Below, piece by piece: positions 13,044 through 46,689 of a stretch of 47,131 bases of DNA. Where the stretch lies: assembly GCA_051530055.1 (NCBI GenBank), contig JBMGUZ010000017.1:1-47131 (forward strand), written 5' to 3'. The DNA is from Neoechinorhynchus agilis (lineage: Eukaryota > Animalia > Acanthocephala). Made by a program: the position numbers and the translations under genes. Each line of letters opens with the position of its first letter. Positions within the stretch are counted from its first letter, which is position 1. The notes beneath the pieces were generated by a model. The model saw only the letters and a list, made by a program, of their open reading frames with translations. It did no database searches and was not told the origin of the DNA.

Positions 13044-16000
13044 TTACATATTCTCCCAATGGAGTCCATAGGCATGACTGTACGATTGGCCATATTTACT
13101 AGTGACTTGCGGTACGCTGTGCCCTAACCAGATTTTCTTGATTTTATCATACGCCGTCTTTGAAAACATGAGTTTGTCTCCTCGTCTGAGTAGATCGTCA
13201 GGTTCGCCGAACTCGTTAGCGTACGGTGCACTCATCTTTGCTCCTCGCACCTTAAGGGGTCGCCGACTGACCAATTGAAGGCAGATAATGAGACATTCCT
13301 TAATTCTCAACAATATCCCACAACCGGATCGCCATGAACACTTGGCAACGTGTCTACATGCTTCTCCTGCTACAGCTCGTCCATCCGCATCTCCGAAGAG
13401 ATCAGAAGGTTCTTCTAGGCTAAGCGTTGAATACTGATGCCTTGAACTGACCATCGCTCTTAGATTCTGTAATCTAACACTTACACAAATCAGTTCGCCA
13501 CACACAAGGCACAAATAGGCTTGTTTGCAATTCGGGACTCCGAGTCCATGGGAAACAGTCGAAGGTGCCAAAAGCATCACATATTCTTCTGGTAAACTCA
13601 TGAGGATTTGTTTGTGATGAAGTGAAGTAGACAGATAATAGGGAAAGTATGGCTGTTTGTCTATGTAAGAATGTTTGAACAACAAAACCCACAGATCCAT
13701 GTCATGTGGACCAAGTCCGAGGTAATCGAGGATTGTAGCCAGTTCCATTTCTGCCTCGCCGATTTCATAAGCATCCGCCATTATTTCATTGAATGGTTCC
13801 TGAATAAGATATCTTTTAAGATAACAAATGGCTCTTAGTAAAGGCATCGCCATCTCACTTATTGCTCGTCTGAGTTCAATTGCATTTGAGAACATCTTTG
13901 GTGTGGAACCTGGTGGTGCCACCATACCCAATGACATCGAGTGCTCTTCACGACTTTCAACGAGATGGATAAAAGTCTGCATTGCGAGGTTATCGCTACT
14001 TTCTGTACCATCTGAACTATAAGAAGGATTCAAATGCCAATAGGGCGACATGGTATTGACTATATTTAGACAATGTCTAGCAAGCGCCAGTCTTACGAAA
14101 CCAACGAAATAATCGCTGATGTGGGCATCTTGGAGTTTGCCCTCCTCATGAAGATATACATTCCAAGTACAAATAAGACAAAGAAGGGCGTTGATTACGT
14201 CCAATTCGGTCACCATGTCGGTCATCATAGGCTGAATGGATGGACTTTGGAGGAATTGGAGAGCACTCACAAACGCTGGCTTGATTTCTTCAGCTCTTCG
14301 ACTCATTGTGTGGTAGAAAAGAGGCGCAAACAGTTGTGATAGAAGAAGATGAGTACTGCTTGGTATTTGCTGTTCGCTGAAAATGTTCTTTTCACACAAC
14401 TGAAGGTATTGCTGATGGCAATAAAGGGTGTAAGTCGTTGAACACCACAGAGGCCATACATCAACGCAGTCACATGAAGGAGTTCCAAAATAACATTGTC
14501 GTAGAAAATCGCCATATTGACCAAGAATACGAGCACCTTCAACTACGTAGTGAAGATCTTCGCTGTTCCCAAACAACCAGCCAGTCAATTGTTTAGTATT
14601 CAATTTTTGTTTAGGAGACGAGACGACTATTTGGCGATGGACCGGCATTTCGAGATTTCTGATATCATTCGATCGCATATTCATGCCCAGCTCGACAATC
14701 TGGTAAATTCGCCCGGTTTCATAGTCCTGCTCAACGTTGAACATTGAGCCTTGTTCCTCGTTCGGTACACACATCCCCGGCTTTGTTGGATGTCGTGATT
14801 CGGTCTCAGCTACTTGGTTAATAAATTCATCGAAATATTTGGCAGTTTCGTCCATGTCCATCTTTTCGGTTTCTGTTTTTCCGGCACACTTAAGAGACGG
14901 GAGTAAGGGGAGTAGACAGTTATTGAGAGCTCGGCATAAAGGACACGGGAACTCATTCTGTTGTTTATCGTAGAAAAGATGCATTAAAGACATTGCCATT
15001 TCGTTTGTAACTCTGAGAGAAGTGAAATAGGAGTTGTAGCAATCGACGTGCATCATATGACCACATGAGTTAATGTGGACTCCATTGCGGCAAACAGGAG
15101 TCATCACAAACGGCAAAGGATAACTTTGAGCATCACAAGGCATCAGAACGTTCGATCGTTGAACGTAACACATCACACCCATTGGACGGTTATGAAGCCC
15201 CGCTGATTGTTTGTCTTGGCATATTATACAAGCGTATGCATTCGAACTTAAATTGTCAGCTTCCTGGACGTTGTCCAGGTCGACTTTATGGCTCTTAGCA
15301 AAATTCATTTGTTTACGTGCCATCATCTCGAGCATACGAGCTTTACGCTCCTTTGCCATTTTCTTAGAGCAGTGAATGCTGACTTTGACCGAAAAAGGAG
15401 CTGCCAAACCAACGAATCTCGCTGCTACTGTTTATCAACGAATTAGAATAATCGCGAAAAAAAAGAGACAGCCTTTTAGGTATTCAAGTTTTGTTCTCGA
15501 AAATGGGACAAAAAAATCAATTTACATTATTGAAATATTCTTGAAAAATAGTGCCCACACAAGTAATGAGTGATGGAACGTCTCACATATTTTAATGGGA
15601 ATTAATAAATTGTTTATCTGAACCTACAAGGAAAAAGCGAAGGTTCCCTTTTTAAAAATGTAGCGTTTTAAACTCTAGAAACTAAATGGCTACATAAAAA
15701 TTTAAAAAAAAATAGAACACGAACTGTGCACTTGGCGTCATCGTGATCAAACCTTTTTGTTTACATTTTGATTTAAATTTAAAAAAAACCAAGTCACCGT
15801 CAGACTCACTACATTACGCTGCTCATCCTGAATGGCTCGGTTATTGTCCAAAACCAGTGGTTGAGAAGTTTCTTCATAGCAAGGTAAGAGAGATCTGACA
15901 TAGGTAGCATGGTCTTTGAAATTACTAAGATAAGGTTCTTTAGATATGTCATTAAGCATTTTTGCAAGTTCTTTAGAGTATCTGTAGAATGCCGTGTCCT

Positions 16001-19000
16001 GACCTGGTGGTCGCTGTGCCGCAATTCCGATTAAATCCAGCGTCTTCCTTACTTGTCCGTCTGTACTAAGATGGTGTTTGGCAGGGCCTTCTTCGCCTTC
16101 GTACGTCCTAAGGGATAAGGCAAGTCGTAAGATCCTCATATAAATCTTAACCATTAAATCGCATTCAAGAATGTCAGGAATTGACTGTAGAACGTCTCTG
16201 AATGGAGGTGGGTTAGGAACGGGAAGGAAGTGGGGCATATTTTTTAACTTCCGCCATTCTAGTCGTGAATGCTCAGCTTCGTTGCGCTCCGAAACCGCAT
16301 ACCGATAATAGTAAGGATCGAATTCTGCGTCGGCTACCTCTGGTTTGATCGTGTAGAATATTGACGAATTTTCTGCACTTTGACGGCTAGATTGGGTCGA
16401 TATTTGCTCTAGAACTTGCTCAAAGATTTCTGGATTCGATTCGTTTAGATCACTAGCGGTTTCGTCAAGTCTGCGTATAATGGCAGCGTGAGTATTTGGT
16501 TTTATACAGAGGTAGTGAACAATCTGTCGACGAAGCCATTGTCCTAAACTGATTTGACCGATGTTCTGATTGTAGCGCTCGCAGACAACGTTCATGAGCA
16601 GATCGAGCATGTGTTCAACTACAAAGTTTGTCTGCTTGTATGTGTATCCGGAATCTTGAACATTAAGTTGGGTAATGTCCTCGAAGGATGCCCAAGGCTT
16701 TAGGCCATAGCGAAAAACGACTTGCGCCACAAATTCGTTTGGATCGCCGAACCAGGCTGCAGCCATTTGAAGCGCCTGAAGATCTCGGTCACTCATTTCC
16801 GAGCAGCATTGACCTGAAGAAAGAAGATGAAGTGAGTTTATGACAGAAGTTCCGTTTCGTATCCACATTTGAGCGCAAACTTGGCCCACCAAAGCACGTA
16901 TTGTTACTGGAGATTCCATGAATTGCCTTATTGTGAATCGTTCTTCAACAAGAGACATTGCATCGTGATAAGCGGATTTCCCTTCGTCCGTGTCTGCCCA
17001 GAATACAAGATGAGTCAGAAGTCCAGTGAGAAGACGAGTAGCAGGGTGATGTGCCGAGTGCTGAGCCTCCAGAACGTTCGTTGAGATGCAATGATAGAAA
17101 TCGCCACTGATTTGAACTTCTTCCAATACGATTTTGTCCGCTTGAATGTCCGGCAATTGATTATACAGAGCATTTATTACAGTTATGGTAGTGTTTAAAA
17201 GAAGCGGAAGCCGTTGGCTGATTATTTGATAAAAGAATCTGAGTATGGAGTGGAGTTTCATTAGGAAAACAAATGCAGATTCCCATTCGGGTTCCCGTGG
17301 AACATGGACGTCTACACGTCGTCTAAAACTGTTTACACCTTCAAACATGCAACTGAATTCGACAAGACTGGTTGCACCCGATAGCAGAGATCGATCAGTA
17401 ACCTCTAACATTGCCTTTTTTGAACTCTCGTCCAATGTACTGTAGCAGATCGCATTGATAACAGATTGAAGCAAATGGCGGACATCGCTCATCATTCTAA
17501 GACATTTTCGACCGAATAAAGATCGGTAGGATACATCAGCGTCGAAGACCAACACTCGACTACGACCATTTCCGGGATCGACCGTATGAAAATGTTGTCG
17601 AAGTCGATGACTGATACAACGGATAATCACACTCAAAGCGTCGTGGTCCCGAAGTGCACTCAGAGAAATACTCGGTGTTGTTAAGAACTGAACCGAGAGA
17701 TCAGAGCAACAATTGGTATCGTCGGTCATACTCATGTAGTGAGTCCACATTAGGTCGTAATTTGCGATATAATACTCTGCAACTAATTCCTTCCAACGAT
17801 TTTCCAGCAAGGCGACCACGAATATCCGAGTCCAGACAGCTCGCACTTCTTTCCATAATCGATCACAGTCCGGCATAATGGTGGCTAGCAAGGTTGGTCG
17901 TCCAGTCGCATAATCTTCACGCATGGAAGTAGCATCAGTTTCCATTGCTTCACAAAAGGCAAGACGAAAATGCTTTGAACGTCTTAAAAACTTCTCGATC
18001 ATATCCAGCACTTTATTTGCAGTATTTACTTGGACAAAAAACTCCCAAAAGCAAATACTGCCATGTAACAGCAAAATGTTGGAACTTAATCAATCTGAGA
18101 TGAGTAATTGATAGCTTAATTTGGGACATGTTCAATGCATTAACTCGCTGTTTGATGCGATTGATTATGGCAATACAATGATCTTTACGATCGACAAAAA
18201 GAACTCCTCTACCAACCTTATCGATGGTGTGTGCAATATCGTATCCTTGTGCCCGCGTCCGATTGAGACAATCAACCATAAGACTCGTGATATCTCCAAA
18301 CGAATGAACTTCGTCATTATAGGTAACAGTGACGAATTCCTCGTGTACATGCGGATCTTGTTCACTTTGAACTACATTTTCATCAATGACCGGCTTAGCG
18401 AACAAGATGTCTCGACAGAAATGAAGGAGCTTAGCGATTAGTTTCGTGCTAGACGGTTGTATAAAAACATTCGTTAGATCGCTATCATCTTCTGGTTCAT
18501 GAATGGAACAGTTTGGAAATGAAGTCCACGCTTCGTCATCGCCACAATCACAGAATCCACCGCCGTCCGATTGCTGGACGCGGTATCGGTGGTACCGATG
18601 AGCCGAATTCACAAAACATTCAGTACAAAAGACGCATGTTGGATCAATTGCACAATCCAGGCACTGATATATCACATCATTAGATACAAACATTCGACCG
18701 CATTGTTCAGTTTTCCGAGGTTCCAAATTTACCAAATATTGTAGATCGTGAGCACAACTCAATACGTCCAAAAGTACCTTTTCCAGACTTGTAGACTTGT
18801 CCGGAAGCAAAGTCGGTTTAAGCTCATAAACTTTCTCAACCTCGTCAACCTCATAGGCACGATGAATAGCTTCTTTCATCCAGCTAAGCATAAAGATCCT
18901 ATAGGTCGGCACAGTCAAGCAATTTTCTATTTGGGGCTTTATTATATCAACAAATCTTTTTACGTTAGATAATCCACTCAATTCTAAGTATTCTCCAAGT

Positions 19001-19386
19001 GTTTTGTCAAGATATCCCCGCCTTAGATCAATTATTCCATGATATGTACTGACGTCCGAATAAATATGTTCTGGGATAAGAAGACGAGGGACCCGTGAGC
19101 GCAATATCGATTGCATAAATCGTGGATAATCCGCATCGTCCTCTTCATCGTCGTCAATTAACATATCTTCAAGGCCATCATCAACCTCGAACACGTCGTC
19201 TTCTGTTATAGCATTCGCATCTAAAAATTGATCATTTCTAGCGTTTATCATGTCCGTTCCAATCTCCTCCAAGGCCGAATCATCATCGTTAATCGTTGCG
19301 TCTATTCCATCCTCCTGGTTAATTGGCCTCGCCGCTTCCTCTCCGTCGTTCGGAGGTGACGGTGGTGGAGGAGCATTATCATCCAT
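13044..19386 (-). CDS. UBR1: N-end rule E3 ubiquitin ligase UBR1/UBR2, 3 exons (GT-AG intron 15363-15809; unresolved frame break near 18018-18069)
   Basis: UBR box CGRMF...CLDCAIDPTCVFCTECF...H..HRY...GGGFCDCGDDEAW; ClpS-like YNDEVHSF; RING CIICQ...SCGHMMHVDC...CPLC; C-terminal CLVCGELIC...APYANEFGEPD..LRRG. Confidence 0.95.
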
Positions 19387-29830: not shown

Positions 29831-30436
29831 ATCGGACGAAAGAGCGGACAACAACATCATCCTTACAATTTAAAGTTCTTTGCTTACAAGTTTCACTAAA
29901 TACCTAAGGTACATGGTTCGGTGACTCGTATTTTCCCTGGTCCAAATCAAACGAGTTATTATGTTAACTCTGTACAGCGTCCGAGCTCTTAAATAAATTC
30001 CCATATCACAAAGTCGCTTTTGGCAAGCAGAAGACGCCATTCGCTCTCCGTCAATGGAATACTCAAAGGATCTTTTCGGTACAGTTCACCAAGTGAACTT
30101 CACTTTTTTGCCGTCAACAAAAAGAATAACGCTAACGACCACTTTTTTCCGATTATTAATAACGCCCTCGACCTTAAAATCATAAGCAATCGCATCGAGG
30201 ATGTTTGATTTGGAGTTGTGTCGATCATAACCCCCTCGCAAGATATTTCGATGGAGGAAGCTACAGCAAAAACAATGACCGAAGCTCACTCTGTTTTACC
30301 TCCATGACATTGGCTCTTTGAAACTTACCGTTAGGAGCTCAGTTGATTTTCGAGAAAATCATTCGAACGTTTCCTTGAATATTAAACGACTTTTTCTAGT
30401 GAACAGATGATTTATTTTGATTTTATCCGCGTTCTC

Positions 30437-33400
30437 TCAAACGTGGTATTTTGTGAACTCCTCCAAATCACTCTCAGTCTCGACTTTCCTTAGCCTTCTA
30501 AACACAGACCGTGTGATTTGTTTCACTTCTGCCTGTAATTCTGTAATACTACACGGCTGAGTGGCGATCATTTGTTGAGATAACTGTTTAGCGAGTTTCT
30601 TAAACAATTCCTTCGAAGCGAATCGTCCACTCACATAAAGTGGATTTAATATGTCGACTACCACCTCCGAAATGGCTGACAAATTATTAACTACTTCCTT
30701 TTCAGGTTTAGTAGCCTTTTCTTTACATCCACCTTCTTCTCCACTCGTTCTTTTGCGTCCACTCGCTAGGCTGCTACATTCAGTTACAAACGAAACAACC
30801 GTCATTACGAGATCCAAAACGACTTCTTCGGCCACTCGTGCATCCTCTCTCCGCTGTCTTTCATCGTCCCTAAGCCGTTTTCTTAATCTATGAATTGCCA
30901 ACATACAGTTCGTCCTATAGGTGCTTTCAGATCGACCACATGATCTGTAGATTTCCGCCTCGATCTCTGCACCTTTCCCACGATCATTCTCAATCAATTG
31001 TAGCAAATCCCCGATCTCGGCGACGAATCGCGGTCTTAATCCTTCATCGAACGCCGGAAAGGGCCTCTGATTCAATTCTGCATCAATCTGCTTACTCTGC
31101 CAATCTTTAACGCTTTTTTCGTATATACTTGACCGCCTAAACAAATCCTGACCACTTCCCGATCCACTCGCACAAATGTCACAGCACCTTTCAGGAATAA
31201 AATACTCAATGCCAAAGTATCTGGAGATCATGTAACGCCGACATTTCCGATTCTCACAGAATTCAAGTAACTCCTGCAATCGATAATTCTTATAGTTCGC
31301 TTTGTGATCTTCACCAGCAGTAAATTCCGAATTTAAATCCTCCATTGAGCAATATATACGGCAGTGAGTCGATTTCCGACTAAACTCGTACAAATGACCA
31401 ATATTTTGACGTGATCGGAGTTAAGAAAAAATTAAAGACAAATATCGCGAATCCGAAAATAGACTTGGAATCAGCGCGTTAAAGTATACTAAATGAATCT
31501 ATCTAACAGTCAAGAATTTCACATTAATTAATTGCTTTAGGACGCTGTAGAACACCGTTTTTCAAAGTTAGCCAGTTTCAACAAAATGTCTTATTAACGA
31601 TTTAGAGAATTGTAACAAAAATTTCGCACTACTAATTTTCTGCGTACAACAAAATCACAACGTTTCGATGTTCAGGAAGATGCCGGAAAACAACAACATG
31701 GCAACGTATCAACGTTCAGGGAGATTCCAGGAAACAACAAACGCACCAAGTTTCGACGTACAGGAAGACTTCAGTAAACAAAAAAAATCAACAAGCTTCG
31801 ACTTTCAGACTGATTCCAGGAAACAACAAAACGTACAAAGTTTCGACTTTCAGGGAAATTCAAAAAACAGCAACAAAAGCACCAAGTCTCGACTTTCAGG
31901 AAAATTCAAAAAACAACAAATAACGCACCAAGTCTTGACTTCCAGACTGATTCAAGAAAACAACAGAACGTATAGAGTTTCGACTTTCAGACTGATTCGA
32001 GAAAACAACAAAACGTACAAAGTTTCGACTTTCAGGCTGATTCGAGAAAACAACAAAACGCACAAAGTTTCGACTTTCAAACTGATTCCAAAAAACAACA
32101 AAACGAACAAAGTTTAGACTTTCAGGAAAATTCAAAGAACAACAACAAACGCACCAAGTCTCGACTTCCAGACTGATTCAAGAAAACAACAGAACGTATA
32201 GAGTTTCGACTTTCAAACTGATTCGAGAAAACAACAAAACGCCCAAAGTTTTGACTTTCAGGAAGATTAAAAAACAACAAAACGCCCAAAGTTTCGACTT
32301 TCAGACTGATTCCAAAAAACAACAAAACGCACAAAGTTTCGACTTTCAAACTGATTCCAAAAAACAACAAAACGAACAAAGTTTAGACTTTCAGGAAAAT
32401 TCAAAGAACAACAACAAACGCACCAAGTCTCGACTTCCAGACTGATTCAAGAAAACAACAGAACGTATAGAGTTTCGACTTTCAAACTGATTCGAGAAAA
32501 CAACAAAACGCCCAAAGTTTCGACTTTCAGGAAGATTAAAAAACAACAAAACGCCCAAAGTTTCGACTTTCAGACTGATCCGAGAAAACAACAAAACGCA
32601 CAAAGTTTCGACTTTCAGGGAAATTCAAAAAACAGCAACAAAAGCACCAAGTCTCGACTTTCAGGAAAATTCAAAAAACAACAACAAACGCACCAAGTCT
32701 TGACTTCCAGACTGATTCAAGAAAATAAGAAAACGTACAAAGTTTCGACTTTCAGATTGATTCGAGAAAACAACAAAACGTACAAAGTTTCGACTTTCAG
32801 GCTGATTCGAGAAAACAACAAAACGCACAAAGTTTCGACTTTCAAACTGATTCCAAAAAACAACAAAACGAACAAAGTTTAGACTTTCAGGAAAATTCAA
32901 AGAACAACAACAAACGCACCAAGTCTCGACTTCCAGACTGATTCAAGAAAACAACAGAACGTATAGAGTTTCGACTTTCAAACTGATTCGAGAAAACAAC
33001 AAAACGCCCAAAGTTTCGACTTTCAGGAAGATTAAAAAACAACAAAACGCCCAAAGTTTCGACTTTCAGACTGATTCCAAAAAACAACAAAACGAACAAA
33101 GTTTAGACTTTCAGGAAAATTCAAAGAACAACAACAAACGCACCAAGTCTCGACTTCCAGACTGATTCAAGAAAACAACAGAACGTATAGAGTTTCGACT
33201 TTCAAACTGATTCGAGAAAACAACAAAACGCCCAAAGTTTCGACTTTCAGGAAGATTAAAAAACAACAAAACGCCCAAAGTTTCGACTTTCAGACTGATC
33301 CGAGAAAACAACAAAACGCACAAAGTTTCGACTTTCAGGGAAATTCAAAAAACAGCAACAAAAGCACCAAGTCTTGACTTCCAGACTGATTCAAGAAAAT

Positions 33401-35110
33401 AAGAAAACGTACAAAGTTTCGACTTTCAGATTGATTCGAGAAAACAACAAAACGTACAAAGTTTCGACTTTCAGGCTGATTCGAGAAAACAACAAAACGC
33501 ACAAAGTTTCGACTTTCAAACTGATTCCAAAAAAGAACAAAACGAACAAAGTTTAGACTTTCAGGAAAATTCAAAGAACAACAACAAACGCACCAAGTCT
33601 CGACTTCCAGACTGATTCAAGAAAACAACAGAACGTATAGAGTTTCGACTTTCAAACTGATTCGAGAAAACAACCGCTGATTCCAAAAAACAACAAAACG
33701 CACAAAGTTTCGACTTTCAGACTGATCCGAGAAAACAACAAAACGCACAAAGTTTTGACTTTCAGGCTGCTTCCAAAAACAACAGCAAAACGCACAAAGT
33801 TTCGACTTTCAGAATGATTGAAGTAAGCAACAAATTCAAACAATCTGTTTGAAGCACACTCACCACCTCCCGCCGAATTTCAGCTTTTTTCCTTCCTCGA
33901 CCGTCGCCATCACGCTAGCGAGATATTTTGTCGAAGGAATACGTCTGCTCTTGAGTCTCCGGTTGCCTCTCAATTTCTTCGAGAGATCCTGGAGCATGAC
34001 CAAACATTTCTATCGATCACGTTTGGACTTTCAGACTGATTCGAAAAAACAACAAAACGCCCAAAGTTTCGACTTTCAAGCTGATTCCAAAAAACAATAA
34101 AACGCACAAAGTTTCGACTTTCAGAATGATAAAAGTAAGCAACAAATTAACTACCTAAATCTATCGACCACGTTTCGACTTTCAGGAAGATTCCAGAACA
34201 CAACAAAATCGGTATCTGATGACTGAATTGGTTCTGATGAGAACAAGACATCCACAATTCCTCTTTGAAGATCCGAAACGTCTTCATCCGTCTTATTTTG
34301 CCTTAGAATATACAAATTTTGTTTAACAGTGAACAATCTGCTGGGTAATCTCGAGTCTTTATTGCAATAAACGACGCCATTCTTCATTTTCTTAATGAAC
34401 CGCCACAAGTTTTGAGCAGCTTCTTCAAAGTCATCACGACTCAGTAGTTCATAGAACGGTGAACCGCAAAGTGGCACAGATACACTCACTACTGGGATCC
34501 TCAATTCCATTAACTTATACAAATCCCTCCTTGCCATAGGATTTGTTGGTTTACTTGAAAAGATCCAGACAACCTTTAGAGATCGTTTCAATTGCCACAA
34601 CGACCGATAGGATCTATGAGTGTGTTTATGGACGCTGTAGTCGGAAACACAGTCGGCAACTTCGACAACGACGGCTATCAATGGTCCAATCTTTTCAACC
34701 AACTTCACCAATTCTTGAGATGGTGTCATTCGAGATGTAACGTAAAGAAATCTAAGATCACCACATCGATCAACCAAAGCTTTTTCTTCGTCATGGCTCA
34801 TTCCTTCGTACACGGCAGCGGCTATAAGTCCTTTCGAGCTCAAGAAATCCACTTGAGCTTTCACTTCAGTTTTACTTGGACATATAACCATCGCAAAACC
34901 TGCCAAGTTTGCCGTCGAAATTCCAACGTGATAACACAATGAACGATGATTTTCCATTTGTAAATAAATGTCTTCATTGTTTTTAGCAGTTAGCGCCAAA
35001 TGGATCTCATTTACAGCTTCTTTGTGGTATAATGTCGGAAATTTGAATGATCCAGTCAATTGGTGAAGAACCGATTTTACGCTGGTATCCATAGACGCCC
35101 GAACGGTCAT
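30437..35110 (-). CDS. RECQL5: RECQL5-like protein with degenerate helicase motifs; 2 exons, predicted intron 31380-34154
   Basis: RecQ-colinear N-terminus (RSLCY, QVDFL, LRFLYVT, CVS, GVVYC, FVVFWNLPES), RQC zinc site CRRYMISRYFG...CCDIC, IRI/KIX-like helix, and C-terminal SRI domain VVVDILNPLYVSGRFASKELFKKLAKQLS. Confidence 0.88.
31647..34125. repeat. Hierarchical tandem array of about 41-47 bp units inside the RECQL5 intron
   Basis: AAAACAACAAAACGCACAAAGTTTCGACTTTCAG repeated about 50 times; blocks recur at 224-269 bp and 674-765 bp spacing. Confidence 0.97.
33850..33995 (-). mobile_element. 3' remnant of CRE-like element within the array
   Basis: DNA strongly similar to 1975-2135 (internally shortened). 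Confidence 0.8.
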
Positions 35111-37018
35111 CAAAACTTAATCGCTTTTAAATTATGGGTTTTAAGTAGCCACAAACACAACGATTCTTCCTGATAGTCGCTATCGAAAAATATTTTTATA
35201 ATTTTAGTGAAAATACTTCCAGTAATAGCGTATTTTTGATTTATTGGAGATATTTCGTGGGGTGGTAACCTCACCTCATCAATCTATCCAATGAATCAAA
35301 AATGCTTTTACCGTTAGTATTTTCACCAAATTTATACTTTGACTAATCGGATTGAAGTAAAATGCAGGGCCGATGGATTTCAGTTCGGATTTGTAACTTT
35401 TAAAGTACGATCTCAACCGTGTTTGGATCGCAAATGGAATGGATCCTTTTGGAGGAGTCGCAATGAATTCATGAAGATCGCAATTCATCAACGCCAATTA
35501 AAATATTTTAATTTTAACTAATTAATAAGATAAAGAGAGACCGTAAAGTGGCTAAGGGAACACGTACTAAACGATTTATTTTCGTAGAATTCCAACAAAC
35601 CTTTAGCCGACTTCTTGAATCAATTTAAAGAAGAATGTTTAAAAAAGATGACAACAAAATGCGCGAGCGGAACAATGAAATCAGGAAGCTATGAAAAAAG
35701 ATAATTTGTTTCCTATTTTTAGCGTCGAAATCGTGGTAAGCGATCGTTTTTGTACATCTCGAAGTAAAAATCTTACTCTTCTGTTCTCGGGATAAAGTGT
35801 AACTCAGTTGAAACCAATTGACAGTCGTTATTGTTACGGACTATTTGATTTGTTATTGGGGATTATTGGTACATTTCCGAACATCCACCTTCTTGTTTAG
35901 TTGTTCGTTTGATTTCCTGACATTTTTCTTTTAAAGACACACTAAAAAGAATTAATCGTCTTAAAACCTCGTTAGAGGTGATTTCCAAAACCAACCGAAG
36001 AGTTTTTGAAAAATGAGTAACCTTCAAAGAAAAAATCATTAATTTTCAACAATTCTGTTTAACGAAAATGGGTATCTATAAAAAAAGAAACCTCTACAGT
36101 CGCAGTTTGCTTCTTCGTTTAACACAATAATTCACTTTTTTGGATAATTTTTGGACAAATCCAGCACTTGAAAATAGTCTTTAGAAAGCTCATCTTAAAA
36201 TAAATTGAATCCTTTGATTCTTCGGCTATTTTCTAAAGGTTCAAGTACGGGAGATAGCATAGATTTTGCGTCCGGATTCAGGAGTTTACGAACGTTTCCC
36301 GTCAGCCGTAAGACTGCGAAAGCTCGAAAATAAAGATTTTCTTTATCATATCAACGGCCCATCCAAACGAAATCGCGATTGCAATTGGCCAAATATCGTT
36401 CTCAATTAATTTCACAAATAACGTTTCGAAAAAGTGCAAATCGAATTTTGTCAGCAATGGAATCGCCAAGGAACCTACATTCCGGGCCGTAGGGAAAGGA
36501 AATCATCTCAAAAAAGCCCAAGAACTGCTAAAGTCCCCGCTTCGATGTCGCTAACAAACTTTACATCTCCATGAGCCTTTGTAGATTTTCGAGCAAGACG
36601 ACGAAAGCTCGAATATAAAGATTTTCTTTATCATTACCACAGCCCGGCTAAGTTTCAATTGAAAAACAAAACCTGAGATTGGTTTCCAAAAAATACGCCG
36701 AAAATCGTCTTTGCTATTTGTGGTCACAAAAATTCCTATAAAAAGGAATTTAATTTGTTTGTAATTGTTGTCGTCGTTATTATTGTTGTTGTTGAAAGTT
36801 TTTGGGCGACAAACCTCATGGAGCTCTGCATCGCTTGGCGAGGCTTTATCTTTCGAAAAATCTCGATAAAATATTTTATATCCGGGATTGTGAAGGACAC
36901 ATCTCCAAAGCCCGGATCGCTAAAAGTTTACGATTCTGACTTCACTCTAAAAACGTTCACTATCGTATTTAGGAAATAACTTAATGCAGACGTACAAATA
37001 AAAACTTATTTATCAATA

Positions 37019-37690
37019 TTACTCTCGTCTTACAAAATTGCTCTCAGACGAACTATCTCTACATTGAGATTCTCCTTCTTTATCTTTTATTCTGTTTGTA
37101 CTGCTATCAATTTCTATTGGTGGAAGAGAATTGGCGGCTCCTTCATTTGCCTGAAACAAATTAGTTTCCGTTTGATGGTCAGTTTGATGGATAAAAACGT
37201 CAGATGATTTTTCAACCGGCGAATTGTGAACCGATGGAATGTTTTCCCGAGTTGGTTCACTTATTTTTGTTGTGTCTTCAATCTCGAGTTTCTCCTGTGA
37301 CCTTGCCGATCTTCGTGGTGTTAAGATTTGAGTTCTTTGGTCAATGTTTGTGCCGTGGTCCGGATCAAGAACAGGAGGGATCCATTCTGAAGCCAGAAAT
37401 TTTTCAAATAGTTCGCGAATGGCCGGTTCCCATTCGGAAAATGCGACCGAGTCAGCGCATGAAAAGCAGTAGACCGAACCTTTATATTGATGCCACGATG
37501 GAGTTAAAAAAGTTCCGCATTTTGCACAAATCCAAGGCATTGTTGGCTGCGATGTTTTTGGAAGAAAAGCTTGAGGATTGGCGACTGAATCTTGGCGTTC
37601 ATTTACCATCTCGAGACTGATGACGCCGACTCGATTATTATCATTTATTCTCGGAAAGATTTGCGGCGGACGACTCTCCCACAAACACTG
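37019..37690 (-). CDS. Exon of a gene with a GATA-like zinc finger, gene model incomplete
   Basis: CAKCGTFLTPSWHQYKGSVYCFSC (C-X2-C-X16-C-X2-C with TPxW), CAG acceptor upstream, acidic low-complexity tail. Confidence 0.55.
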   Translation of the reverse strand, partial: QCLWESRPPQIFPRINDNNRVGVISLEMVNERQDSVANPQAFLPKTSQPTMPWICAKCGTFLTPSWHQYKGSVYCFSCADSVAFSEWEPAIRELFEKFLASEWIPPVLDPDHGTNIDQRTQILTPRRSARSQEKLEIEDTTKISEPTRENIPSVHNSPVEKSSDVFIHQTDHQTETNLFQANEGAANSLPPIEIDSSTNRIKDKEGESQCRDSSSESNFVRRE

Positions 37691-39309
37691 TGATATTTTT
37701 TCATTTTATCCAAACTTAAAATGATGAAGTACTGAGGTTTTCCCCCTTGCCCAGTGGCTTGGAATGGCAACCAACAGTGGATTCGTAATCTTTTTAGAAT
37801 TAAACCTTGTTTTATGCACCCAAATTTACAAGATTAAGTGCTGAGGTTTGCCGCTTTACCAGTGCTTTTTAATGAAAATGAGCAGTCGATTCTTCGCTTT
37901 ATTTTGGGAATCAACGAGAATTTTGAACAAATCACAATGCTCGCATTTACAAGTGGCAGTTTCAGTCTTTTTTATCTTTGTTGAAAAAATATCCAATTTC
38001 AAAAAAATAATTGTCACCTTTCGTTCAAATGTTAGCGTGATATTCACGGTGAACAGATTGGTGAATCATCTTACGAACGTTCTTTTAATTGTATTTTTGA
38101 CAAAAAAAGAACCGAAATCATCAGATGGTTAGAATCGGATTATTTAATTCCTTAAAAGAACAGCGAGTATTTCATGGTGCAACAATGAAGTCTTCATGAA
38201 CGTCAACCAAAAGACGACTCTTCAATTCCGCACAATCCTCATTAACGAACAAAAACGTATTGATTTTTGAAAATTTAAGCTTAGGGCTTTGTGAAGTTTG
38301 TCGATGGTTCAATTTTCTAACGGTCGAGATTTTCATGCCGTGGGACGATCATTAAAAGCGGTCGATTTATGCTTGAAATCTATATAATGATTGAAAGCGG
38401 TTAAAGAAAAATCAGGATAAATATCGGAGAATCGAAAAACTTAAAGACATTTAAGCTTGTAAGGTTTTTCACTTGCAATTTTTCTCATTGAACTTTACGC
38501 CGTGATAATGATATTAAAAATTGAATAATCACAACGACGGCAATGGTGTAAAGCGGCAAAATTCTTGGGATCGGGATACGACCACGATTTCGTGGCATTC
38601 GATTTCGAGCTCTTAAACTATTCGACGAATTGGGCCGCCGAATGAAGAAGGCGATTAAGTTTCTCGATCCTTTGTCCGACAGATCGAGAGCAGGATAATC
38701 TCAAATATCCCGGAGCTACAACGTTTCTTGAAGTCGTCCATTGTTAACATTGCCCGGATACCTTGGAATTGTTGAATAAAGTGACGCTCCGGAGTAGTAA
38801 ATATCGGCCTCTTTTTCTCAATAGATGGAAAATGGACACAGCAAAATCCATTTGTTTAAAAGTTACCGACGTCTTTCTTTGACACAAAATGCTACTAGGA
38901 AAGATTGATAGACACCTTGAGGAATTGCACAATCTTCTCGCAATAAAGATTTTTAGATTGGAAATAATCGATGCATCGGTGCCGTTTGTCGCATCAACCC
39001 GTTTTCTACTTCATTCTTCAATGTTAGTTGAATTCGCCTACTATTCCATCTTCTCGGGATTGCATTGGAGGCGATCGCTAAGGATGTTTCTGTGTTGTTA
39101 ACCGGAGCGGTCTAATAGTCAAAAATCGATTTGTTCGATTGAGGAAACGGCGGAATCTCTGCCTGTTTCAGCCTGCTGGCAGCGTAAGCTATGTCATACA
39201 TAATTCGACCAAGGAATTTCGAAAACGTTGATCCAAAGAAGTCCGAATAAACTGTACCTGGCAATTCGTACGGCCATAACTTCTAATCCCTCCAGTATGG
39301 CTCCCAAAA

Positions 39310-41323: not shown

Positions 41324-43170
41324 GTGTTTGACCCGAAATTTTTCTCAACCAAGGATATAGTTGCGCCAGAGGCCGACTTATCCGAGATTGAGGAACCAAC
41401 AACTTTCTCAAGTTTGGCAGAAGTAGATTTGAGGACACCAGATTGGCTGTGCGGTGAGTTGCCAGAGGCACTCAAGCGCAATTTACCAGCCCTTTGGAAT
41501 CTGAAAGATAATGACGGTGGATTAAAACTGTCGCTTTCTTTGATTTACAACTTCGAGCAGGGTGGAAAAGTGTGGAATCGGGATATAGAGATTAGATTTT
41601 CAATGGTGGATACAGATGTGAGATGTCGATATGTGAGCAGCGGCGAAACGACGGCAGAATACGCACCCCTGGTGCTGTTGGAGCTGTGTTGTGGATTGGC
41701 GGATATAGTCAGGGACGGGGCATGGCTGCAGGCCCTTAAGAACACGATCCAGTTCATTGGAGGAGTGAGGGCGCAAGATTACTCGCCGGGGCACGCGAAG
41801 GCAGTCCAAGCTCTTGTAGGTCGACAGGTCCAGCCAGAACGCCTAGTAATGAGGGTGGCAGCCATCTTTTGCGCGCAGGCACTAAGAGAATCAGGAACGC
41901 AATTCGAGCGAAGGTTGCGTTGGGTTAGGAATATTAGATGGACGAATATGAACAACAGCATGGCGCATGGGGACCTGCTTTTGCAAGCAGTGTCGAGAAG
42001 ATCAGATGTGATTTATGTACCGGCGGAGGTGGGAGATCCTAGAACAGCGCTTGCGGCAGTTGGCCTGGCAGCGAGTGATGCTTTCCCTTTCCGGGGAATG
42101 TTACTTGGCAGAACAGCTTGGCCCAACATAAACAACCCGGTTGTTGCTTACTGCAGGACATTGGACTGTGATTACGATCTAGAGGACATCGCGCTCCCAT
42201 CACGTACGCTTTGGGATATATACTATAGAATGTGTCATCATTACGGATGGACACAATTGTGGTGGAATATGGTTCGTGGAGTCATGTTTGATGGGATGCG
42301 GTTAGAAAACATGGGTTTCCATCGCGGAGTAAATGATTATGTTCAGAGGTTGCCTGACTCGGACTTATCTCCCCTCGGCTTAGGCCCGTTGCTGGAGCAA
42401 TACAAACCAATGGATTCGACGGCTGGCCCGCGAGGAGACCAGTTGATACGGGAGGCGATGATGCGTCACATATTACTATCGAGCTGTTACGCGGAAGCGA
42501 CCCAGTGTACAGGATGGCAACATGTGTCAATGGGATTGGGCGGCAGGGTGGCCAATTCGTTGCTGTTGCGCGATTTCAATAATCAAGAAGGATGCATAAC
42601 TGGGCGGGTAGCGGATTCACTGGCCAAGAGAGCTGGCTGGCAGCAGGCAATTCCGGGCTGGCATCTGCAAAGAGAGTTGGTGCACCTGAATACTCAAGTG
42701 GATGACACTACAGACTGGGATTTTCAACACCAGAAATCTCATCAGCGAAGATCGTTCTGGATGGCTTCGAGGTACAAAATGCAGATACGGTCGCTGGCAA
42801 ATGGGTGACGGTGAGAGCAGTGCATGGGTATGACCCCAGGCTTGCGAACTTGGCTTTACAGGCCCTTGGGACGGCCATTGAGTACAGGAGGACCTGGTCG
42901 GATTCGGGGAGAAGTGAACACATTGTCCAAAGAAGGCCCAACAGGGATGATTTCTGGCTCCGGTTTGTTCTGTATTTGCCATCAACATATGTGGGCCATG
43001 GTCACATTGACGTGCTGTTGACCCGCGTCGCGAGCTTCCATGAAACTCTCCAGCAGCTGCATCTTTTCAAATGTTTCGGACGCGCAGAGAAATGGGTTTC
43101 AACGCCTCAGGGTGCAGCCCATGCCTCAGCAATTCCAACGCATTGGGACACATTCGGCCCCCCGCCGGGC
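41324..43170 (+). other. Putative endogenous viral element copy 1 (capsid-like ORF, one 37-nt deletion, 3'-truncated)
   Basis: Intronless, visibly GC-richer than host genes, about 95% amino-acid identical to 44215-46689 by manual count; frameshift near 42719; ends at GPPP followed by TAAA repeats. Viral identity is inferred. Confidence 0.6.
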
Positions 43171-44214: not shown

Positions 44215-46689
44215 ATGATGAATCGACGATTTGAACCGAAATTTTTCTCCACTAAGGATATTGTTGCGCCAGAGGCCGACCTATCCGAGGTTGAGGAGCC
44301 AACTACCTTTTCGAGTCTGGCTGAAGTGGACCTAAGGACGCCAGATTGGCTGTGCGGCGAGTTGCCAGAGGCACTCAAGCGCAATCTCCCAGCTCTCTGG
44401 AATTTGAAAGACAATGAAGGCGGGCTGAAGTTATCACTTTCTTTGATCTACAATTTTGAACAAGGAGGGAAAGTTTGGAACCGAGATATCGAAATCATAT
44501 TTGGCATGGTGGACACAGGTGTGCGGTGTCGCTACGTAAGCAGTGGAGAGACAACAGCTGAATATGCACCCTTAGTCTTACTGGAACTGTGTTGTGGACT
44601 AGCGGACATTGTTAGGGATGGAGCGTGGCTACAGGCCCTTAAGAACACGAGCCAGTTCATTGGAGGAGTGAGGGCGCAAGATTACTCGCCGGGGCACGCG
44701 AAGGCAGTGCAAGCTCTAGTGGGCCGACAAGTTCAACCGGAACGATTTGTGATGAGAATGGCGGCCATTTTCTGCGCACAGGCCTTGAGAGAGTCGGGGA
44801 CACATTTTGAGCGGAGGTTGGGCTGGGTCAGGAACATTCGGTGGATGAATGTCAATAACAGTATGGCTCACGGGGACCTGCTTCTGCAAGCAGTGTCAAG
44901 GCGATCGGACGTGATCTACGTGCCGGCTGAAGTGGGAGATCCCAGGACAGCACTTGCAGCGGTTGGACTGGCGGCGAGCGATGCCTTCCCCTTTCGAGGG
45001 ATGCTATTGGGCAGGACGGCTTGGCCAAACATCAACAATCCGGTGGTTGCTTATTGTAGAACGCTAGACTGCGATTATGATCTTGAGGATATTGGACTTC
45101 CGTCGCGCACGCTCTGGGACATATATTACAGAATGTGTCACCACTATGGATGGACACAGCTGTGGTGGAACATGGTCCGTGGGGTCATGTTCGACGGAAT
45201 GCGCCTTGAAAATGTGGGATTTCACCGTGGCGTGAACGACTATGTGCAAAGGTTGCCCGACTCAGATTTATCAGCCCTAGGCTTGGGGCCATTGTTGGAA
45301 CAATACAAGCCCATGGACTCTAGAGCCGGCCCACGGGGAGATCAACTAATACGGGAGGCAATGATGCGTCATATATTGTTGTCGAGTTGCTATGCTGAAG
45401 CCACCCATTGCACAGGGTGGCAACATGTGTCGATGGGACTAGGCGGCAGGGTAGCCAATTCCCTTCTGCTGCGGGACTTCAACAATCACGAAGGCTGTAT
45501 CACTGGGAGAGTCGCGGACTCGTTGGCAAAGAGAGCTGGCTGGCAGCATGCAATCCCGGGCTGGCACCTACAAAGAGAATTGGTGCATCTGAACACACAG
45601 GTGGAAGACATAACGGATTGGGCGAGCTACCTCCCTTGGCATGTGGCCTCAATGATGGGATTCTCAACGCCAGAGATTTCATCCGCAAAAATCGTATTAG
45701 ACGGCTTCGAGGTGCAGAATGCGGACGCGGTGGCAGGTAAATGGGTAACAGTGAAGGCAGTGCACGGTTACGATCCCCGGCTAGCAAACTTAGCTTTACA
45801 GGCACTCGGGACAGCCATAGAATACAGAAGGACCTGGTCCGACTCAGGGAGAAGCGAACATATTGTGCAAAGACGGCCGAATAGAGACGACTTCTGGCTT
45901 CGATTCGTTCCATATCTACCATCAACCTACGTGGGTCATGGGCACATTGACGTGTTGCTAACGCGAGTGGCAAGTTTCCATGAAACTCTGCAGCAACTGC
46001 ACCTGTTCAAGTGTTTTGGACGTGCAGAAAAATGGGTCTCAACACCTCAAGGCGCAGCTCATGCTTCGGCACTCCCAACCCACTGGGACACGTTTGGTCC
46101 TCCGCCCCTGGAAGGACCCAACCGTCCTCACCGAAGGAAAGGAGATCAGCAAGGACCGCCACCACCACCAGAGAAACGAACAGCCACACAAAAGCGCAAC
46201 ATGACCAAACCTCTTGGAGACACCGATAAGCAACAACTAAGGGAGTTTGAGACGCCGGCACCTGAGACGCCTGAAGAGCAACAGCGGAGAAAGCCGAGCG
46301 TGGAAACTGACCTGCCTGCAGTTGAGGAAGAGTTAAGCTCATCGGATGCAGAATCAATGCCCGCGCCGCAAATGGGCCCTAATCCAAATTTGCAGGAGGG
46401 CACAGCAAGTGAAGAGCAGGAATCATTGACCCACGGACCGACATTTGAGGAAACACAGATTGACGTGTTGAGGAGCGTGCGGGGAGTAGATCCTGAGTTG
46501 ATTGACGCTCTGTATATGGCAATAGGCCCTAGGGGAGTAGAGGACACAGAGGATGAACTCAGGGGCAAGGCGGAACTCAAGCTGCAAACCACATTCTTTG
46601 ACGCAGGCTGGCTCGAGCAGCTGCGGAGAATAGAAATGGAAGACAGGCCTAAGGCAGCACGAGCTATTGCTGCGGGACTTCAACAATGA
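44215..46689 (+). CDS. Putative endogenous viral element copy 2: intact 824-aa ORF, capsid-like body plus Pro-rich/acidic tail
   Basis: Uninterrupted ORF with an ATG in A-rich context, no introns, no cellular or transposon domain recognised. The size and Pro-rich tail resemble toti-like/victorivirus capsids (inference). Confidence 0.6.
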   Translation: MMNRRFEPKFFSTKDIVAPEADLSEVEEPTTFSSLAEVDLRTPDWLCGELPEALKRNLPALWNLKDNEGGLKLSLSLIYNFEQGGKVWNRDIEIIFGMVDTGVRCRYVSSGETTAEYAPLVLLELCCGLADIVRDGAWLQALKNTSQFIGGVRAQDYSPGHAKAVQALVGRQVQPERFVMRMAAIFCAQALRESGTHFERRLGWVRNIRWMNVNNSMAHGDLLLQAVSRRSDVIYVPAEVGDPRTALAAVGLAASDAFPFRGMLLGRTAWPNINNPVVAYCRTLDCDYDLEDIGLPSRTLWDIYYRMCHHYGWTQLWWNMVRGVMFDGMRLENVGFHRGVNDYVQRLPDSDLSALGLGPLLEQYKPMDSRAGPRGDQLIREAMMRHILLSSCYAEATHCTGWQHVSMGLGGRVANSLLLRDFNNHEGCITGRVADSLAKRAGWQHAIPGWHLQRELVHLNTQVEDITDWASYLPWHVASMMGFSTPEISSAKIVLDGFEVQNADAVAGKWVTVKAVHGYDPRLANLALQALGTAIEYRRTWSDSGRSEHIVQRRPNRDDFWLRFVPYLPSTYVGHGHIDVLLTRVASFHETLQQLHLFKCFGRAEKWVSTPQGAAHASALPTHWDTFGPPPLEGPNRPHRRKGDQQGPPPPPEKRTATQKRNMTKPLGDTDKQQLREFETPAPETPEEQQRRKPSVETDLPAVEEELSSSDAESMPAPQMGPNPNLQEGTASEEQESLTHGPTFEETQIDVLRSVRGVDPELIDALYMAIGPRGVEDTEDELRGKAELKLQTTFFDAGWLEQLRRIEMEDRPKAARAIAAGLQQ

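What the first reader, a model, noticed from the sequence alone, without database searches (positions are those of the whole stretch)
30437..35110. Catalytically dead RECQL5 that retains its RNA polymerase II-binding modules
Walker A MPTGxGKSLCY reads MENHRSLCY, Walker B DEAH reads EVAD, motif III TAT reads SKP, and motif VI [10 protein letters not shown] is reduced to DRFSRKS, with a shortened second RecA lobe. Yet both exons are open, and the RQC zinc ligands, the IRI/KIX-like helix and the SRI domain are conserved. RECQL5 is known to regulate Pol II through KIX and SRI independently of helicase activity, so this looks like a natural pseudo-helicase specialised for transcription. I know of no described example.
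Basis: partly seen in the sequence, partly recalled or inferred. Interest (0 to 1): 0.75.

Follow-up and report, generated by a model that had tools for sequence, protein, structure and literature searches.

The report
Expressed ATPase-dead RecQ5 keeping its SRI domain
The only RecQ5 (RECQL5) gene of the thorny-headed worm Neoechinorhynchus agilis is expressed and in frame. It has lost every ATP-handling motif of its helicase motor but keeps a normal RNA-polymerase-II tail-binding (SRI) domain, so it is probably a natural non-enzymatic RecQ5.

Summary
The observation largely holds. Window 30437-35110 (minus strand) is a two-exon, 632-codon RecQ5 gene of Neoechinorhynchus agilis, annotated in NCBI only as a hypothetical protein.

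- **Dead motor.** Alignment to 113 RecQ proteins shows lesions in motifs 0, I, II, III, V and VI. Pfam finds no DEAD or Helicase_C domain.
- **Kept parts.** RecQ_Zn_bind scores 29 bits. SRI scores 43.6 bits, the same level as active insect RecQ5, and the residues needed for phospho-CTD binding are present.
- **Real gene.** The 46.2-Mb genome has BLM-, WRN- and RecQ4-like genes but no second RecQ5 and no other SRI. Contigs of four probable RNA runs carry the whole spliced message.

Two corrections:
- **Junction.** The RNA junction is 34178|31402, across a 2,775-nt non-GT-AG intron. Motif VI therefore reads LYEFSRKS, not DRFSRKS.
- **IRI.** The IRI (brake helix plus KIX), the main Pol II-binding module in human RECQL5, is not detectable.

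No ortholog was found, so dN/dS by domain and the age of the loss remain open. My reading is a non-enzymatic, CTD-tethered RecQ5: a new variant of a known kind. Other notes of this scan report the intron satellite and the non-canonical intron class elsewhere in this genome.

The parts
35111..35169 (-). 5' untranslated region; the likely transcript start is near 35145-35169
   Evidence: Contigs of runs X2 and X3 end at 35169 and 35145. Almost nothing is covered upstream. The first ATG is at 35110, and a TAA lies two codons before the frame opens.
34178..35110 (-). Exon 1 coding part, 311 codons: degenerate RecA lobe 1 and most of a shortened lobe 2
   Evidence: Open frame. phmmer to RecQ catalytic cores gives E 1e-13. 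One contig per run covers it in 4 runs. The codon score of 0.188 bits per codon resembles real genes of this genome, and P(open by chance) is 5e-10.
34931..34957 (-). Motif I (Walker A) remnant, MENHRSLCY
   Evidence: It aligns to MPTGGGKSLCY with a 2-residue gap, no glycine and K changed to R.
34607..34669 (-). Motif II remnant, VVEVADC (DEAH reads EVAD), and a degenerate aromatic-rich loop with a 3-residue insertion
34544..34564 (-). Motif III remnant, IFSSKPT (TAT reads SKP)
34217..34249 (-). Motif V remnant, VLFSSEPIQSS, with a 4-residue deletion of the FGMG loop
31403..34177 (-). Intron of 2,775 nt with non-GT-AG ends (CG..AT, or TC..AA if the cut is moved by one base). It is filled by a 45-bp satellite (31646-34130).
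   Evidence: The loose ends of the exon 1 contigs in X2-X5 read, in reverse complement, the minus strand from 31402 downward. No contig covers 34131-34177. Satellite. Possible 9-bp pairing of 34173-34165 with 31417-31409: -15.9 kcal/mol, against -11.4 +/- 2.9 for shuffles.
30437..31402 (-). Exon 2 coding part, 321 codons plus stop: motif VI remnant, Zn-binding subdomain, helical middle region, SRI
   Evidence: In frame with exon 1 across the RNA-supported junction. The unaligned remainder of each contig (about 1,000-1,360 nt) matches exon 2 plus a 3' UTR.
31349..31402 (-). Motif VI remnant, IGHLYEFSRKSTHCRIYC. It stands where orthologs have [24 protein letters not shown], is 6 residues shorter, and has lost the GRAGR arginine-finger loop.
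31172..31243 (-). RecQ Zn-binding subdomain core with four cysteines (C365, C384, C385, C388)
   Evidence: Pfam PF16124 at 29-31 bits, cut-off 25. Own-genome scan 33.5 bits. The cysteines fall in nearly invariant columns.
30692..31171 (-). Helical middle region (residues 389-548) in the position of the IRI. Its homology to the brake helix and KIX is not demonstrable.
   Evidence: No PDB sequence match. hhalign against an insect IRI profile gives E 0.25. AF2 pLDDT is below 55. The language-model feature search has a RecQ5 cluster as top hit at 0.81, which is a lead only.
30476..30676 (-). SRI (Set2-Rpb1 interacting) domain
   Evidence: Pfam PF08236 at 41.6-44.6 bits, cut-off 23.5. phmmer to human RECQL5 911-983 gives E 4e-9. 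The equivalents of F938, K939 and R943 are F, K and K, with K as in Diptera.
30401..30436 (-). Short 3' UTR holding an AATAAA. The end position is inferred.
   Evidence: The contig lengths of X3 and X4, minus their exon 1 part, place their ends near 30401-30411. Sequence.

Best explanation
This is the single RecQ5 (RECQL5) ortholog of Neoechinorhynchus agilis.

Shown here:
- It is transcribed and spliced in frame through a 2,775-nt non-GT-AG intron. It encodes 632 residues.
- The RecQ motor has lost motifs 0, I, II, III, V and VI and has a shortened second lobe.
- The Zn-binding subdomain is retained, and the C-terminal SRI domain is preserved about as well as in active orthologs.

Inferred from established SF2/RecQ enzymology:
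- With no P-loop, no catalytic glutamate and no arginine finger, the protein cannot bind and hydrolyse ATP as a RecQ helicase does. It can therefore neither unwind DNA nor translocate on it.

Inferred from the human SRI data:
- The SRI tethers the protein to Ser2/Ser5-phosphorylated heptad pairs of the Pol II tail during elongation.

Inferred, weakest step:
- The folded but nucleotide-blind RecQ core plus Zn module serves as a passive DNA- or protein-binding body. It would act as a roadblock or scaffold fixed in an apo-like state, not as a motor.
For: - **RecQ5 identity.** RecQ_Zn_bind and SRI are over their Pfam cut-offs. The SRI matches human RECQL5 911-983 at E 4e-9, and no SETD2 entry appears in that list. 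There is no WH or HRDC domain. Foldseek's best hits for the model are human RECQL5 helicase structures at E 5e-20. The best eukaryotic sequence hits to exon 1 are insect RecQ5.
- **Dead motor.** See the motif table. Pfam DEAD and Helicase_C are absent here, against 88-103 and 68-88 bits in insect RecQ5. Core identity to RecQ5 is 24.5%, while insect RecQ5 share 59% with each other and 39% with bacterial RecQ. The terminal branch is 10, against 1.44 for BLM of the same genome.
- **Still a working gene.** One full-length spliced contig is present in each of four runs, with 0-1 differences in exon 1. The codon signature is normal, P(open by chance) is 5e-10, and the other frames hold 12-24 stops. 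About 20 indels against orthologs are all in frame.
- **Domain-specific constraint.** SRI scores 43.6 bits, against 32-50 in insects. The residues essential for phospho-CTD binding are kept.
- **Sole copy.** The genome holds only BLM-, WRN- and RecQ4-like paralogs and no other SRI.
Against: - No ortholog from another acanthocephalan or rotifer could be retrieved. There is therefore no dN/dS by domain, and the age of the loss is unknown.
- An open exon 1 is needed merely to translate the SRI. Openness alone does not show that the helicase-like body has a function of its own.
- The IRI, the main Pol II contact in human RECQL5, is not recognisable.
- The worm's Pol II tail is very degenerate, with six heptad-like units and none canonical. 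The SRI's ligand is therefore scarce.
- The four runs are labelled RNA only by a guess. Their RNA nature is inferred from patchy, exon-limited coverage and from the poly-A mRNA-seq study of this species (PMC12690905).
- There is no protein-level evidence.
- The AF2 confidence for lobe 1 is partly imposed by the RecQ alignment that was supplied.
Confidence: 0.6

Rival explanations
1. A gene on its way out. In a parasite lineage with heavy gene loss, RecQ5 lost its function. The locus is still transcribed and by luck or recency still open, but the protein does nothing.
For: The helicase core is extremely diverged. The IRI is not recognisable. The species lacks many core metazoan genes (PMC12256650, PMC12690905). 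No ortholog is available to show constraint.
Against: The SRI is as well conserved as in active insect orthologs, with its key residues kept. The core is more diverged from animal RecQ5 than animal RecQ5 is from bacterial RecQ, yet there is no stop in 632 codons (P about 5e-10 per exon), all indels are in frame, and the codon signature is normal. The message is precisely spliced in four samples.
Confidence: 0.2
2. A non-enzymatic RecQ5 whose retained role is not at Pol II. It could act in DNA repair or replication, for example as a RAD51- or PCNA-binding scaffold, with the SRI used for something other than the CTD.
For: Human RECQL5 has RAD51- and PCNA-linked roles (PMC12526125, PMC13519111). 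The worm's CTD has few heptads. The middle region of 160 residues is unexplained.
Against: No RAD51- or PCNA-binding motif was identified here. The only recognisable non-core module is the SRI. In human RECQ5 the SRI is necessary and sufficient for association with transcribed genes (PMC3001069).
Confidence: 0.15
3. Still an ATPase or helicase that uses unconventional motifs.
For: The RecA-like fold is predicted with high confidence for lobe 1. An R follows the H at the Walker A lysine position, and an E stands at the first DEAH position.
Against: The P-loop is two residues short and has no glycine. The catalytic E is V. Motifs III, V and VI are all lost and lobe 2 is truncated. K58R and D157A single mutants are used as dead controls for human RECQL5 (K58R from my own knowledge; D157A in PMC12440807).
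Confidence: 0.03

Closest known systems
Human RECQL5, and the insect RecQ5 retrieved here (e.g. P0073 Anabrus simplex, P0003 Fopius arisanus)
   Same: The order of modules is the same: RecQ core, Zn-binding subdomain, no WH or HRDC, a long helical C-terminal part, and a terminal SRI. The SRI is about 40% identical to the human one, counted by eye in the alignment. The CRIY strand after motif VI is shared. The best structural matches are RECQL5 crystal structures.
   Different: All ATPase motifs are destroyed and lobe 2 is shortened. There is no recognisable brake helix or KIX. The protein has 632 residues, against 890-1490 in the others, and no Pfam DEAD or Helicase_C signal.
Engineered ATPase-dead RECQL5 (D157A; K58R)
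   Same: Loss of ATP hydrolysis with retained Pol II-binding parts. D157A still binds DNA (PMC12440807).
   Different: Those are single substitutions in an otherwise intact motor that keeps the IRI. Here the whole nucleotide site is gone by natural evolution, and the IRI is not recognisable.
SRI domain of Set2/SETD2
   Same: A three-helix domain of the same Pfam family (PF08236), with the conserved F-K...[KR] binding residues.
   Different: The sequence is of the RecQ5 type: it matches the RECQL5 SRI in the PDB search, and no SETD2 entry appears there. No other SRI is detectable in this genome.
Other pseudo-helicases, including the DDX21-derived half-helicase noted by this scan in the same genome (s1-269071)
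   Same: A helicase-family protein is kept and expressed after loss of its catalytic residues.
   Different: That case is a second copy beside an intact gene. Here the dead copy is the only RecQ5. I did not test that other claim.
Hairpin-bounded non-GT-AG introns of N. agilis (scan notes s1-037694, s1-037712, s1-037768)
   Same: The RNA-supported junction has non-canonical ends, the intron ends can pair (9 bp), and the public gene model misses it.
   Different: This one is much longer (2,775 nt) and filled with a satellite. It has only a 1-nt direct repeat (T) rather than TA. Its end pairing is not statistically distinct from shuffles (8% reach it).

Membership tests
RecQ5 / RECQL5 orthologs | RecQ-type two-lobe helicase core by homology | tested here: met
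   phmmer to RecQ catalytic cores gives E 1e-13. Foldseek's top hits are human RECQL5 at E 5e-20. However, Pfam DEAD and Helicase_C are not detected.
RecQ5 / RECQL5 orthologs | RecQ Zn-binding subdomain with four cysteines | tested here: met
   PF16124 scores 29-33.5 bits, over the cut-off of 25. C365, C384, C385 and C388 fall in the conserved columns, but the Cys2-Cys3 spacing is shortened.
RecQ5 / RECQL5 orthologs | C-terminal SRI domain, with no WH or HRDC | tested here: met
   PF08236 scores 43.6 bits. The match to human RECQL5 911-983 has E 4e-9. There is no RQC-WH or HRDC hit.
RecQ5 / RECQL5 orthologs | IRI module (brake helix plus KIX) between the Zn subdomain and the SRI | tested here: not met
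   There is no PDB match at E up to 10. hhalign against an insect IRI profile gives E 0.25. An insect control matches human 436-613 at E 2e-11. The feature search gives a lead only, at 0.81.
RecQ5 / RECQL5 orthologs | Helicase core groups with RecQ5 in a tree | tested here: inconclusive
   The terminal branch of 10 changes per column leaves the row unplaced. The insect RecQ5 form one group.
Active SF2/RecQ ATPase-helicase | Walker A GxxxxGK[ST], DExH with catalytic E, motif III, motif VI arginine finger | tested here: not met
   The motifs read MEN--HRS, EVAD, SKP and LYEFSRKS, and the motif 0 Q is H.
SRI domain able to bind phospho-CTD | Residues equivalent to human RECQ5 F938, K939 and R943 (R943A abolishes binding; PMC3001069) | tested here: met
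   They are F, K and K. K also stands at the R943 position in dipteran RecQ5. Actual binding is not testable here.
Processed or unitary pseudogene | Stops or frameshifts, no expression, neutral codon signature | tested here: not met
   The frame is open over 632 codons. The coding score is 0.165-0.188 bits per codon, as in real genes. Spliced contigs are present in four runs.
Hairpin-bounded non-GT-AG introns of this genome | A non-canonical junction supported by RNA, with self-pairing ends | tested here: inconclusive
   The junction 34178|31402 with CG..AT or TC..AA ends appears in four runs. A 9-bp end pairing exists, but 8% of shuffles reach its energy.

The most novel reading that the evidence does not exclude
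A natural separation-of-function RecQ5. In an animal with a near-vestigial Pol II tail, selection has kept only the phospho-CTD tether (SRI) and a nucleotide-blind RecQ/Zn body, and has discarded both the motor and the canonical jaw-binding IRI. This would imply that the ancestral indispensable role of RecQ5 at Pol II is ATP-independent. The message also depends on removal of a 2.8-kb non-GT-AG intron by the unconventional route suspected elsewhere in this genome.
Probability: 0.3. Interest if true: 0.75.

Novelty: new variant of a known kind. Interest (0 to 1): 0.6.

Why it matters
RECQL5 is the only RecQ helicase that binds Pol II directly. How much of its role needs ATP is under active debate: the 2025 cryo-EM papers assign braking and restart partly to helicase activity and nucleotide binding.

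An animal whose sole RecQ5 is nucleotide-blind yet keeps a well-conserved SRI is a natural experiment on which functions are motor-independent. It would give a testable system using ATPase, CTD-peptide binding and ChIP assays. I found no paper describing such a natural form.

The locus also gives RNA-level evidence, in four samples, for a long non-GT-AG intron that the public annotation replaced by a wrong GT-AG model. This bears on the unexplained intron class in this genome.

Tried and rejected
- **Word-index protein searches.** Exon 1, the C-terminal half and the whole annotated protein found only the protein itself plus generic bacterial RecQ. The full HMMER search with exon 1 found no relative above generic RecQ level. 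No ortholog means no dN/dS.
- **Tree of helicase cores.** The query could not be placed because of its branch length of 10.
- **Single-sequence AF2 of residues 392-632.** Mean pLDDT was 48, too poor for a fold search, so none was run on it.
- **Complex prediction.** The RPB1 jaw (residues 1100-1330) against residues 425-535 gave no verdict, with a score of 0.03. This counts neither for nor against binding.
- **GT-AG junction.** The 34155|31379 junction, which I first adopted and which the NCBI model P0001 uses, is rejected because no contig covers 34131-34177 and all four contigs join 34178 to 31402.
- **U12-type intron.** Rejected, since the ends do not fit AT-AC or GT-AG U12 consensus (from the sequence).
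- **SRI captured from SETD2.** Rejected, because the SRI matches the RECQL5 SRI and no SETD2 entry appears in the PDB search.
- I did not lay reads over the whole gene, because the intron is a long tandem repeat, which the tool says it turns away. Only exon 1 and its upstream region were laid. The annotated model P0001 differs from it at 6 positions within residues 312-318 and was used by reference instead. Exons were joined only inside a script, to check the frame.
Full report
**What is there**

The minus strand of window 30437-35113 carries two long open frames of 320 and 318 codons. They are separated by a stretch filled with a 45-bp tandem repeat at 31646-34130.

Pfam finds RecQ_Zn_bind (31 bits) and SRI (41.6 bits) in the downstream frame. 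It finds no helicase domain in the upstream one.

The upstream frame is nevertheless RecQ-derived. phmmer aligns residues 52-257 to the catalytic cores of Cronobacter and E. coli RecQ at E 1e-13 and 1.5e-12.

The SRI part matches human RECQL5 residues 911-983 at E 4e-9.

The database protein identical to the locus is NCBI 'hypothetical protein ACOME3_010511 [Neoechinorhynchus agilis]', on a contig of 47,131 bases, which is the whole window. The genome searched as G000 has 46.2 Mb. That is the size published for this species (PMC12690905).

**Motif status**

I aligned the protein with 113 RecQ proteins from the full HMMER search, including nine insect RecQ5 named as such by NCBI or UniProt.

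| Motif | Consensus | N. agilis |
|---|---|---|
| 0 | Q | H |
| I (Walker A) | MPTGGGKS | MEN--HRS (two residues deleted, no glycine, K to R) |
| II | DEAH | EVAD |
| aromatic-rich loop | WGHDFRP | YSVHKHTHR (3-residue insertion) |
| III | TAT | SKP |
| before YHAGL | | about ten residues missing; YHAGL reads VKQNL |
| V | ATxAFGMGIDK | FSSEP----IQ |
| VI | [12 protein letters not shown] | LYEFSRKS (six residues shorter) |

The stretch from motif IV to the CRIY strand is 80 residues, against 97 in an insect ortholog.

By the established roles of these motifs in SF2/RecQ enzymes, the protein cannot bind and hydrolyse ATP in the RecQ manner. The relevant roles are the P-loop lysine and glycines, the catalytic glutamate of DExH and the arginine finger of motif VI. 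This step is an inference from enzymology, not an assay.

**How unusual the core is**

- Pfam DEAD and Helicase_C score 88-103 and 68-88 bits in five insect RecQ5. They score nothing at E up to 0.1 here.
- Over the core columns, the worm protein is 24.5% identical to insect RecQ5. Insect RecQ5 are 59% identical to each other and 39% identical to bacterial RecQ.
- In a maximum-likelihood tree the terminal branch is about 10 changes per column. The median is 0.56, and BLM of the same genome has 1.44. The row cannot be placed.
- The SRI scores 43.6 bits, within the insect range of 32-50.
- The SRI keeps the residues whose equivalents matter in human RECQ5. F938 and K939 are identical. R943 is K, as in dipteran RecQ5 (PMC3001069).

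Decay is therefore domain-specific.

**Fold**

AlphaFold2 with the RecQ alignment gives these confidence values:

| Region | Residues | pLDDT |
|---|---|---|
| Lobe 1 | 1-250 | above 90 |
| Part of lobe 2 | 260-300 | about 50 |
| Zn subdomain | 340-390 | 80-90 |
| Middle region | 395-545 | below 55 |
| SRI (three helices) | 545-632 | 55-70 |

Foldseek ranks human RECQL5 helicase structures first (E 5e-20), ahead of bacterial RecQ, RECQ1, BLM and WRN. The lobe 1 confidence partly reflects the alignment that was supplied.

**Is it the only RecQ5?**

Scans of the whole assembly gave the following:
- Two RecQ_Zn_bind matches: this gene and a BLM-like gene on C3 with an HRDC domain.
- A single SRI match, which is this gene.
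- No paralog of exon 1.
- An intact WRN-like gene on C2.
- A RecQ4-like gene on C1.

All three RPB1-type polymerase genes are found, so the assembly is not grossly incomplete. No intact RecQ5 exists in it.

**Expression and the true junction**

Four runs of one study hold 97-98% of the sampled words of exon 1. They are labelled RNA by a guess and have 16-21 Mb of contigs each.

When laid on 34131-38000, each run has one contig of 1.9-2.3 kb. It covers exon 1 from 35102-35169 down to exactly 34178. It then continues with letters whose reverse complement is the minus strand from 31402 downward.

Nothing covers 34131-34177, and almost nothing covers 35170-36100. The runs therefore behave as RNA.

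The junction 34178|31402 is in frame and reads ...NLPES|IGHLYEFSRKSTHCRIY.... The cut can be moved by one base.

The intron has 2,775 nt. Its ends are CG..AT, or TC..AA with the shifted cut, so it is not GT-AG and not U12-type.

That model also gives 632 residues but reads ...NLPESRNVVDRFSRKS.... No contig supports it. The RNA form also restores better colinearity with the start of motif VI in orthologs (P-x-N-[IL]-x-x-Y-Y-Q-E-S).

The intron ends can form a 9-bp helix with one G.U pair. Its energy (-15.9 kcal/mol) is reached by 8% of shuffles. I treat it only as compatible with the hairpin-bounded intron class that other notes of this scan describe in this genome.

**Is the frame maintained?**

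- Exon 1 has a codon-usage score of 0.188 bits per codon, and exon 2 has 0.165. Seven real genes of this genome score 0.135-0.266. Shifted frames score about -0.4 to -0.6.
- A random sequence of the same composition would stay open with P about 5e-10 (exon 1) and 8e-11 (exon 2). The other five frames of exon 1 hold 12-24 stops.
- Some 20 indels against orthologs are all in frame.

The coding frame has therefore been kept by selection through a very large amount of change.

One caveat applies. Exon 1 must stay open for the SRI to be translated at all. Openness alone does not prove that the helicase-like body has a function of its own. The retained hydrophobic pattern and the predicted fold suggest at least selection for a folded domain.

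**The second Pol II-binding module**

In human RECQL5 the IRI (brake helix plus KIX) gives the major contribution to Pol II binding. The SRI adds binding to phosphorylated Pol II (PMC12440807).

- An active insect RecQ5 matches human residues 436-613 at E 2e-11 and the KIX crystal chain at 5e-5.
- The worm's residues 392-548 match nothing in the PDB at E up to 10.
- They give E 0.25 against a profile of five insect IRI regions.
- Short resemblances exist: KDWQSKQIDAELNQR at 410-424, DLLQLIENDRGKG at 443-455 and YRTNCML at 473-479. They conflict with each other and lack the aromatic contact residues.
- A language-model feature search of this part has a chordate RecQ5 cluster as its top hit, but at 0.81, below the level at which the tool's own controls allow more than a lead.
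- The complex prediction with the RPB1 jaw gave no verdict.

Retention of the IRI is therefore not supported.

**Context for the mechanism**

The worm's RPB1 is a single 1,870-codon frame. Its tail holds only six heptad-like units: YSPSSPS-YSPGSPS, YSPTSPR-YSPCSPK, YSPKMPK and YSPSSPS. None is canonical. Two tandem pairs remain as possible SRI ligands.

PMC12262184 reports that nucleotide-free RECQL5 acts as a roadblock and twists downstream DNA, and that nucleotide binding pushes Pol II to the post-translocated state. PMC12440807 reports that helicase activity contributes to braking.

A nucleotide-blind RecQ5 could therefore at most act as a passive, apo-like body tethered by its SRI. It could not perform the nucleotide-driven steps.

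**Verdict**

Two corrections apply: the junction with its motif VI reading, and the IRI.
- The best reading, at confidence 0.6, is an expressed, selectively maintained, non-enzymatic RecQ5 that keeps the phospho-CTD tether.
- The main rival, at 0.2, is a decaying gene.

I found no paper describing a natural ATPase-dead RecQ5. I class it as a new variant of a known kind.

Noticed in passing
window 31646-34211: The 45-bp intronic satellite unit closely resembles the last 31 nt of exon 1 plus the first 14 nt of the intron, so each of about 45 copies carries a copy of the RNA-supported 5' junction (CTGAAAGT|CGAAAC). The unit is 15 codons long and open in the gene's strand. The RNA contigs use only the first copy. 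This scan already noted it as s1-296091.
   Followed up: partly
L013:1167-6779 (G000:C3:4436166-4441778): RPB1 is one 1,870-codon frame. Its C-terminal tail is S/P-rich but holds only six YSPxSPx-like heptads and no canonical YSPTSPS. This is a very degenerate CTD for an animal.
   Followed up: partly
G000 whole genome; L014 (G000:C3:4393107-4393202): The RecQ5 gene holds the only detectable SRI domain in the assembly. The single AWS-domain hit, a candidate SETD2/NSD-type gene, has no detectable SRI, so a Set2-type SRI may be lost or too diverged to see.
   Followed up: no
L015:2154-4535 (G000:C1:3562653-3565034): A RecQ4-like gene (ESYVQQIGRA, IDEAHCLSLWGKDFRP, LTATAT). Its Walker A region is not readable in a continuous frame, with stops between pieces, and its motif VI is odd (GRAIGRCK). 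It may hold another non-canonical insert.
   Followed up: no
window 37137-37678 (minus-strand ORF 37019-37684, 221 aa, no Pfam hit): This neighbouring stretch is covered in all four runs. Contigs run on with unlike letters (loose ends) at 37624 and 37678. It shows many differences between contigs (up to 11 in 272 nt), unlike exon 1 of the RecQ5 gene. It may be a multi-copy or highly polymorphic gene.
   Followed up: no
window 35257-35316: In runs X4 and X5 a low-depth contig replaces 58 nt upstream of the gene by 21 other letters. This is probably an indel allele near the promoter.
   Followed up: no
window 3492-4061, 10006-10710, 13044-19386: The neighbours are ordinary genes: an FHA-domain ORF, CWC15 (203 bits), and a UBR1-type N-recognin in three large open frames (UBR box, ClpS, winged helix, PRT6_C).
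   Followed up: partly
window 41324-42808 and 44215-46689: Two large G+C-richer ORFs (494 and 824 aa) have no Pfam family. Other notes of this scan read them as endogenous viral capsid-like copies.
   Followed up: no
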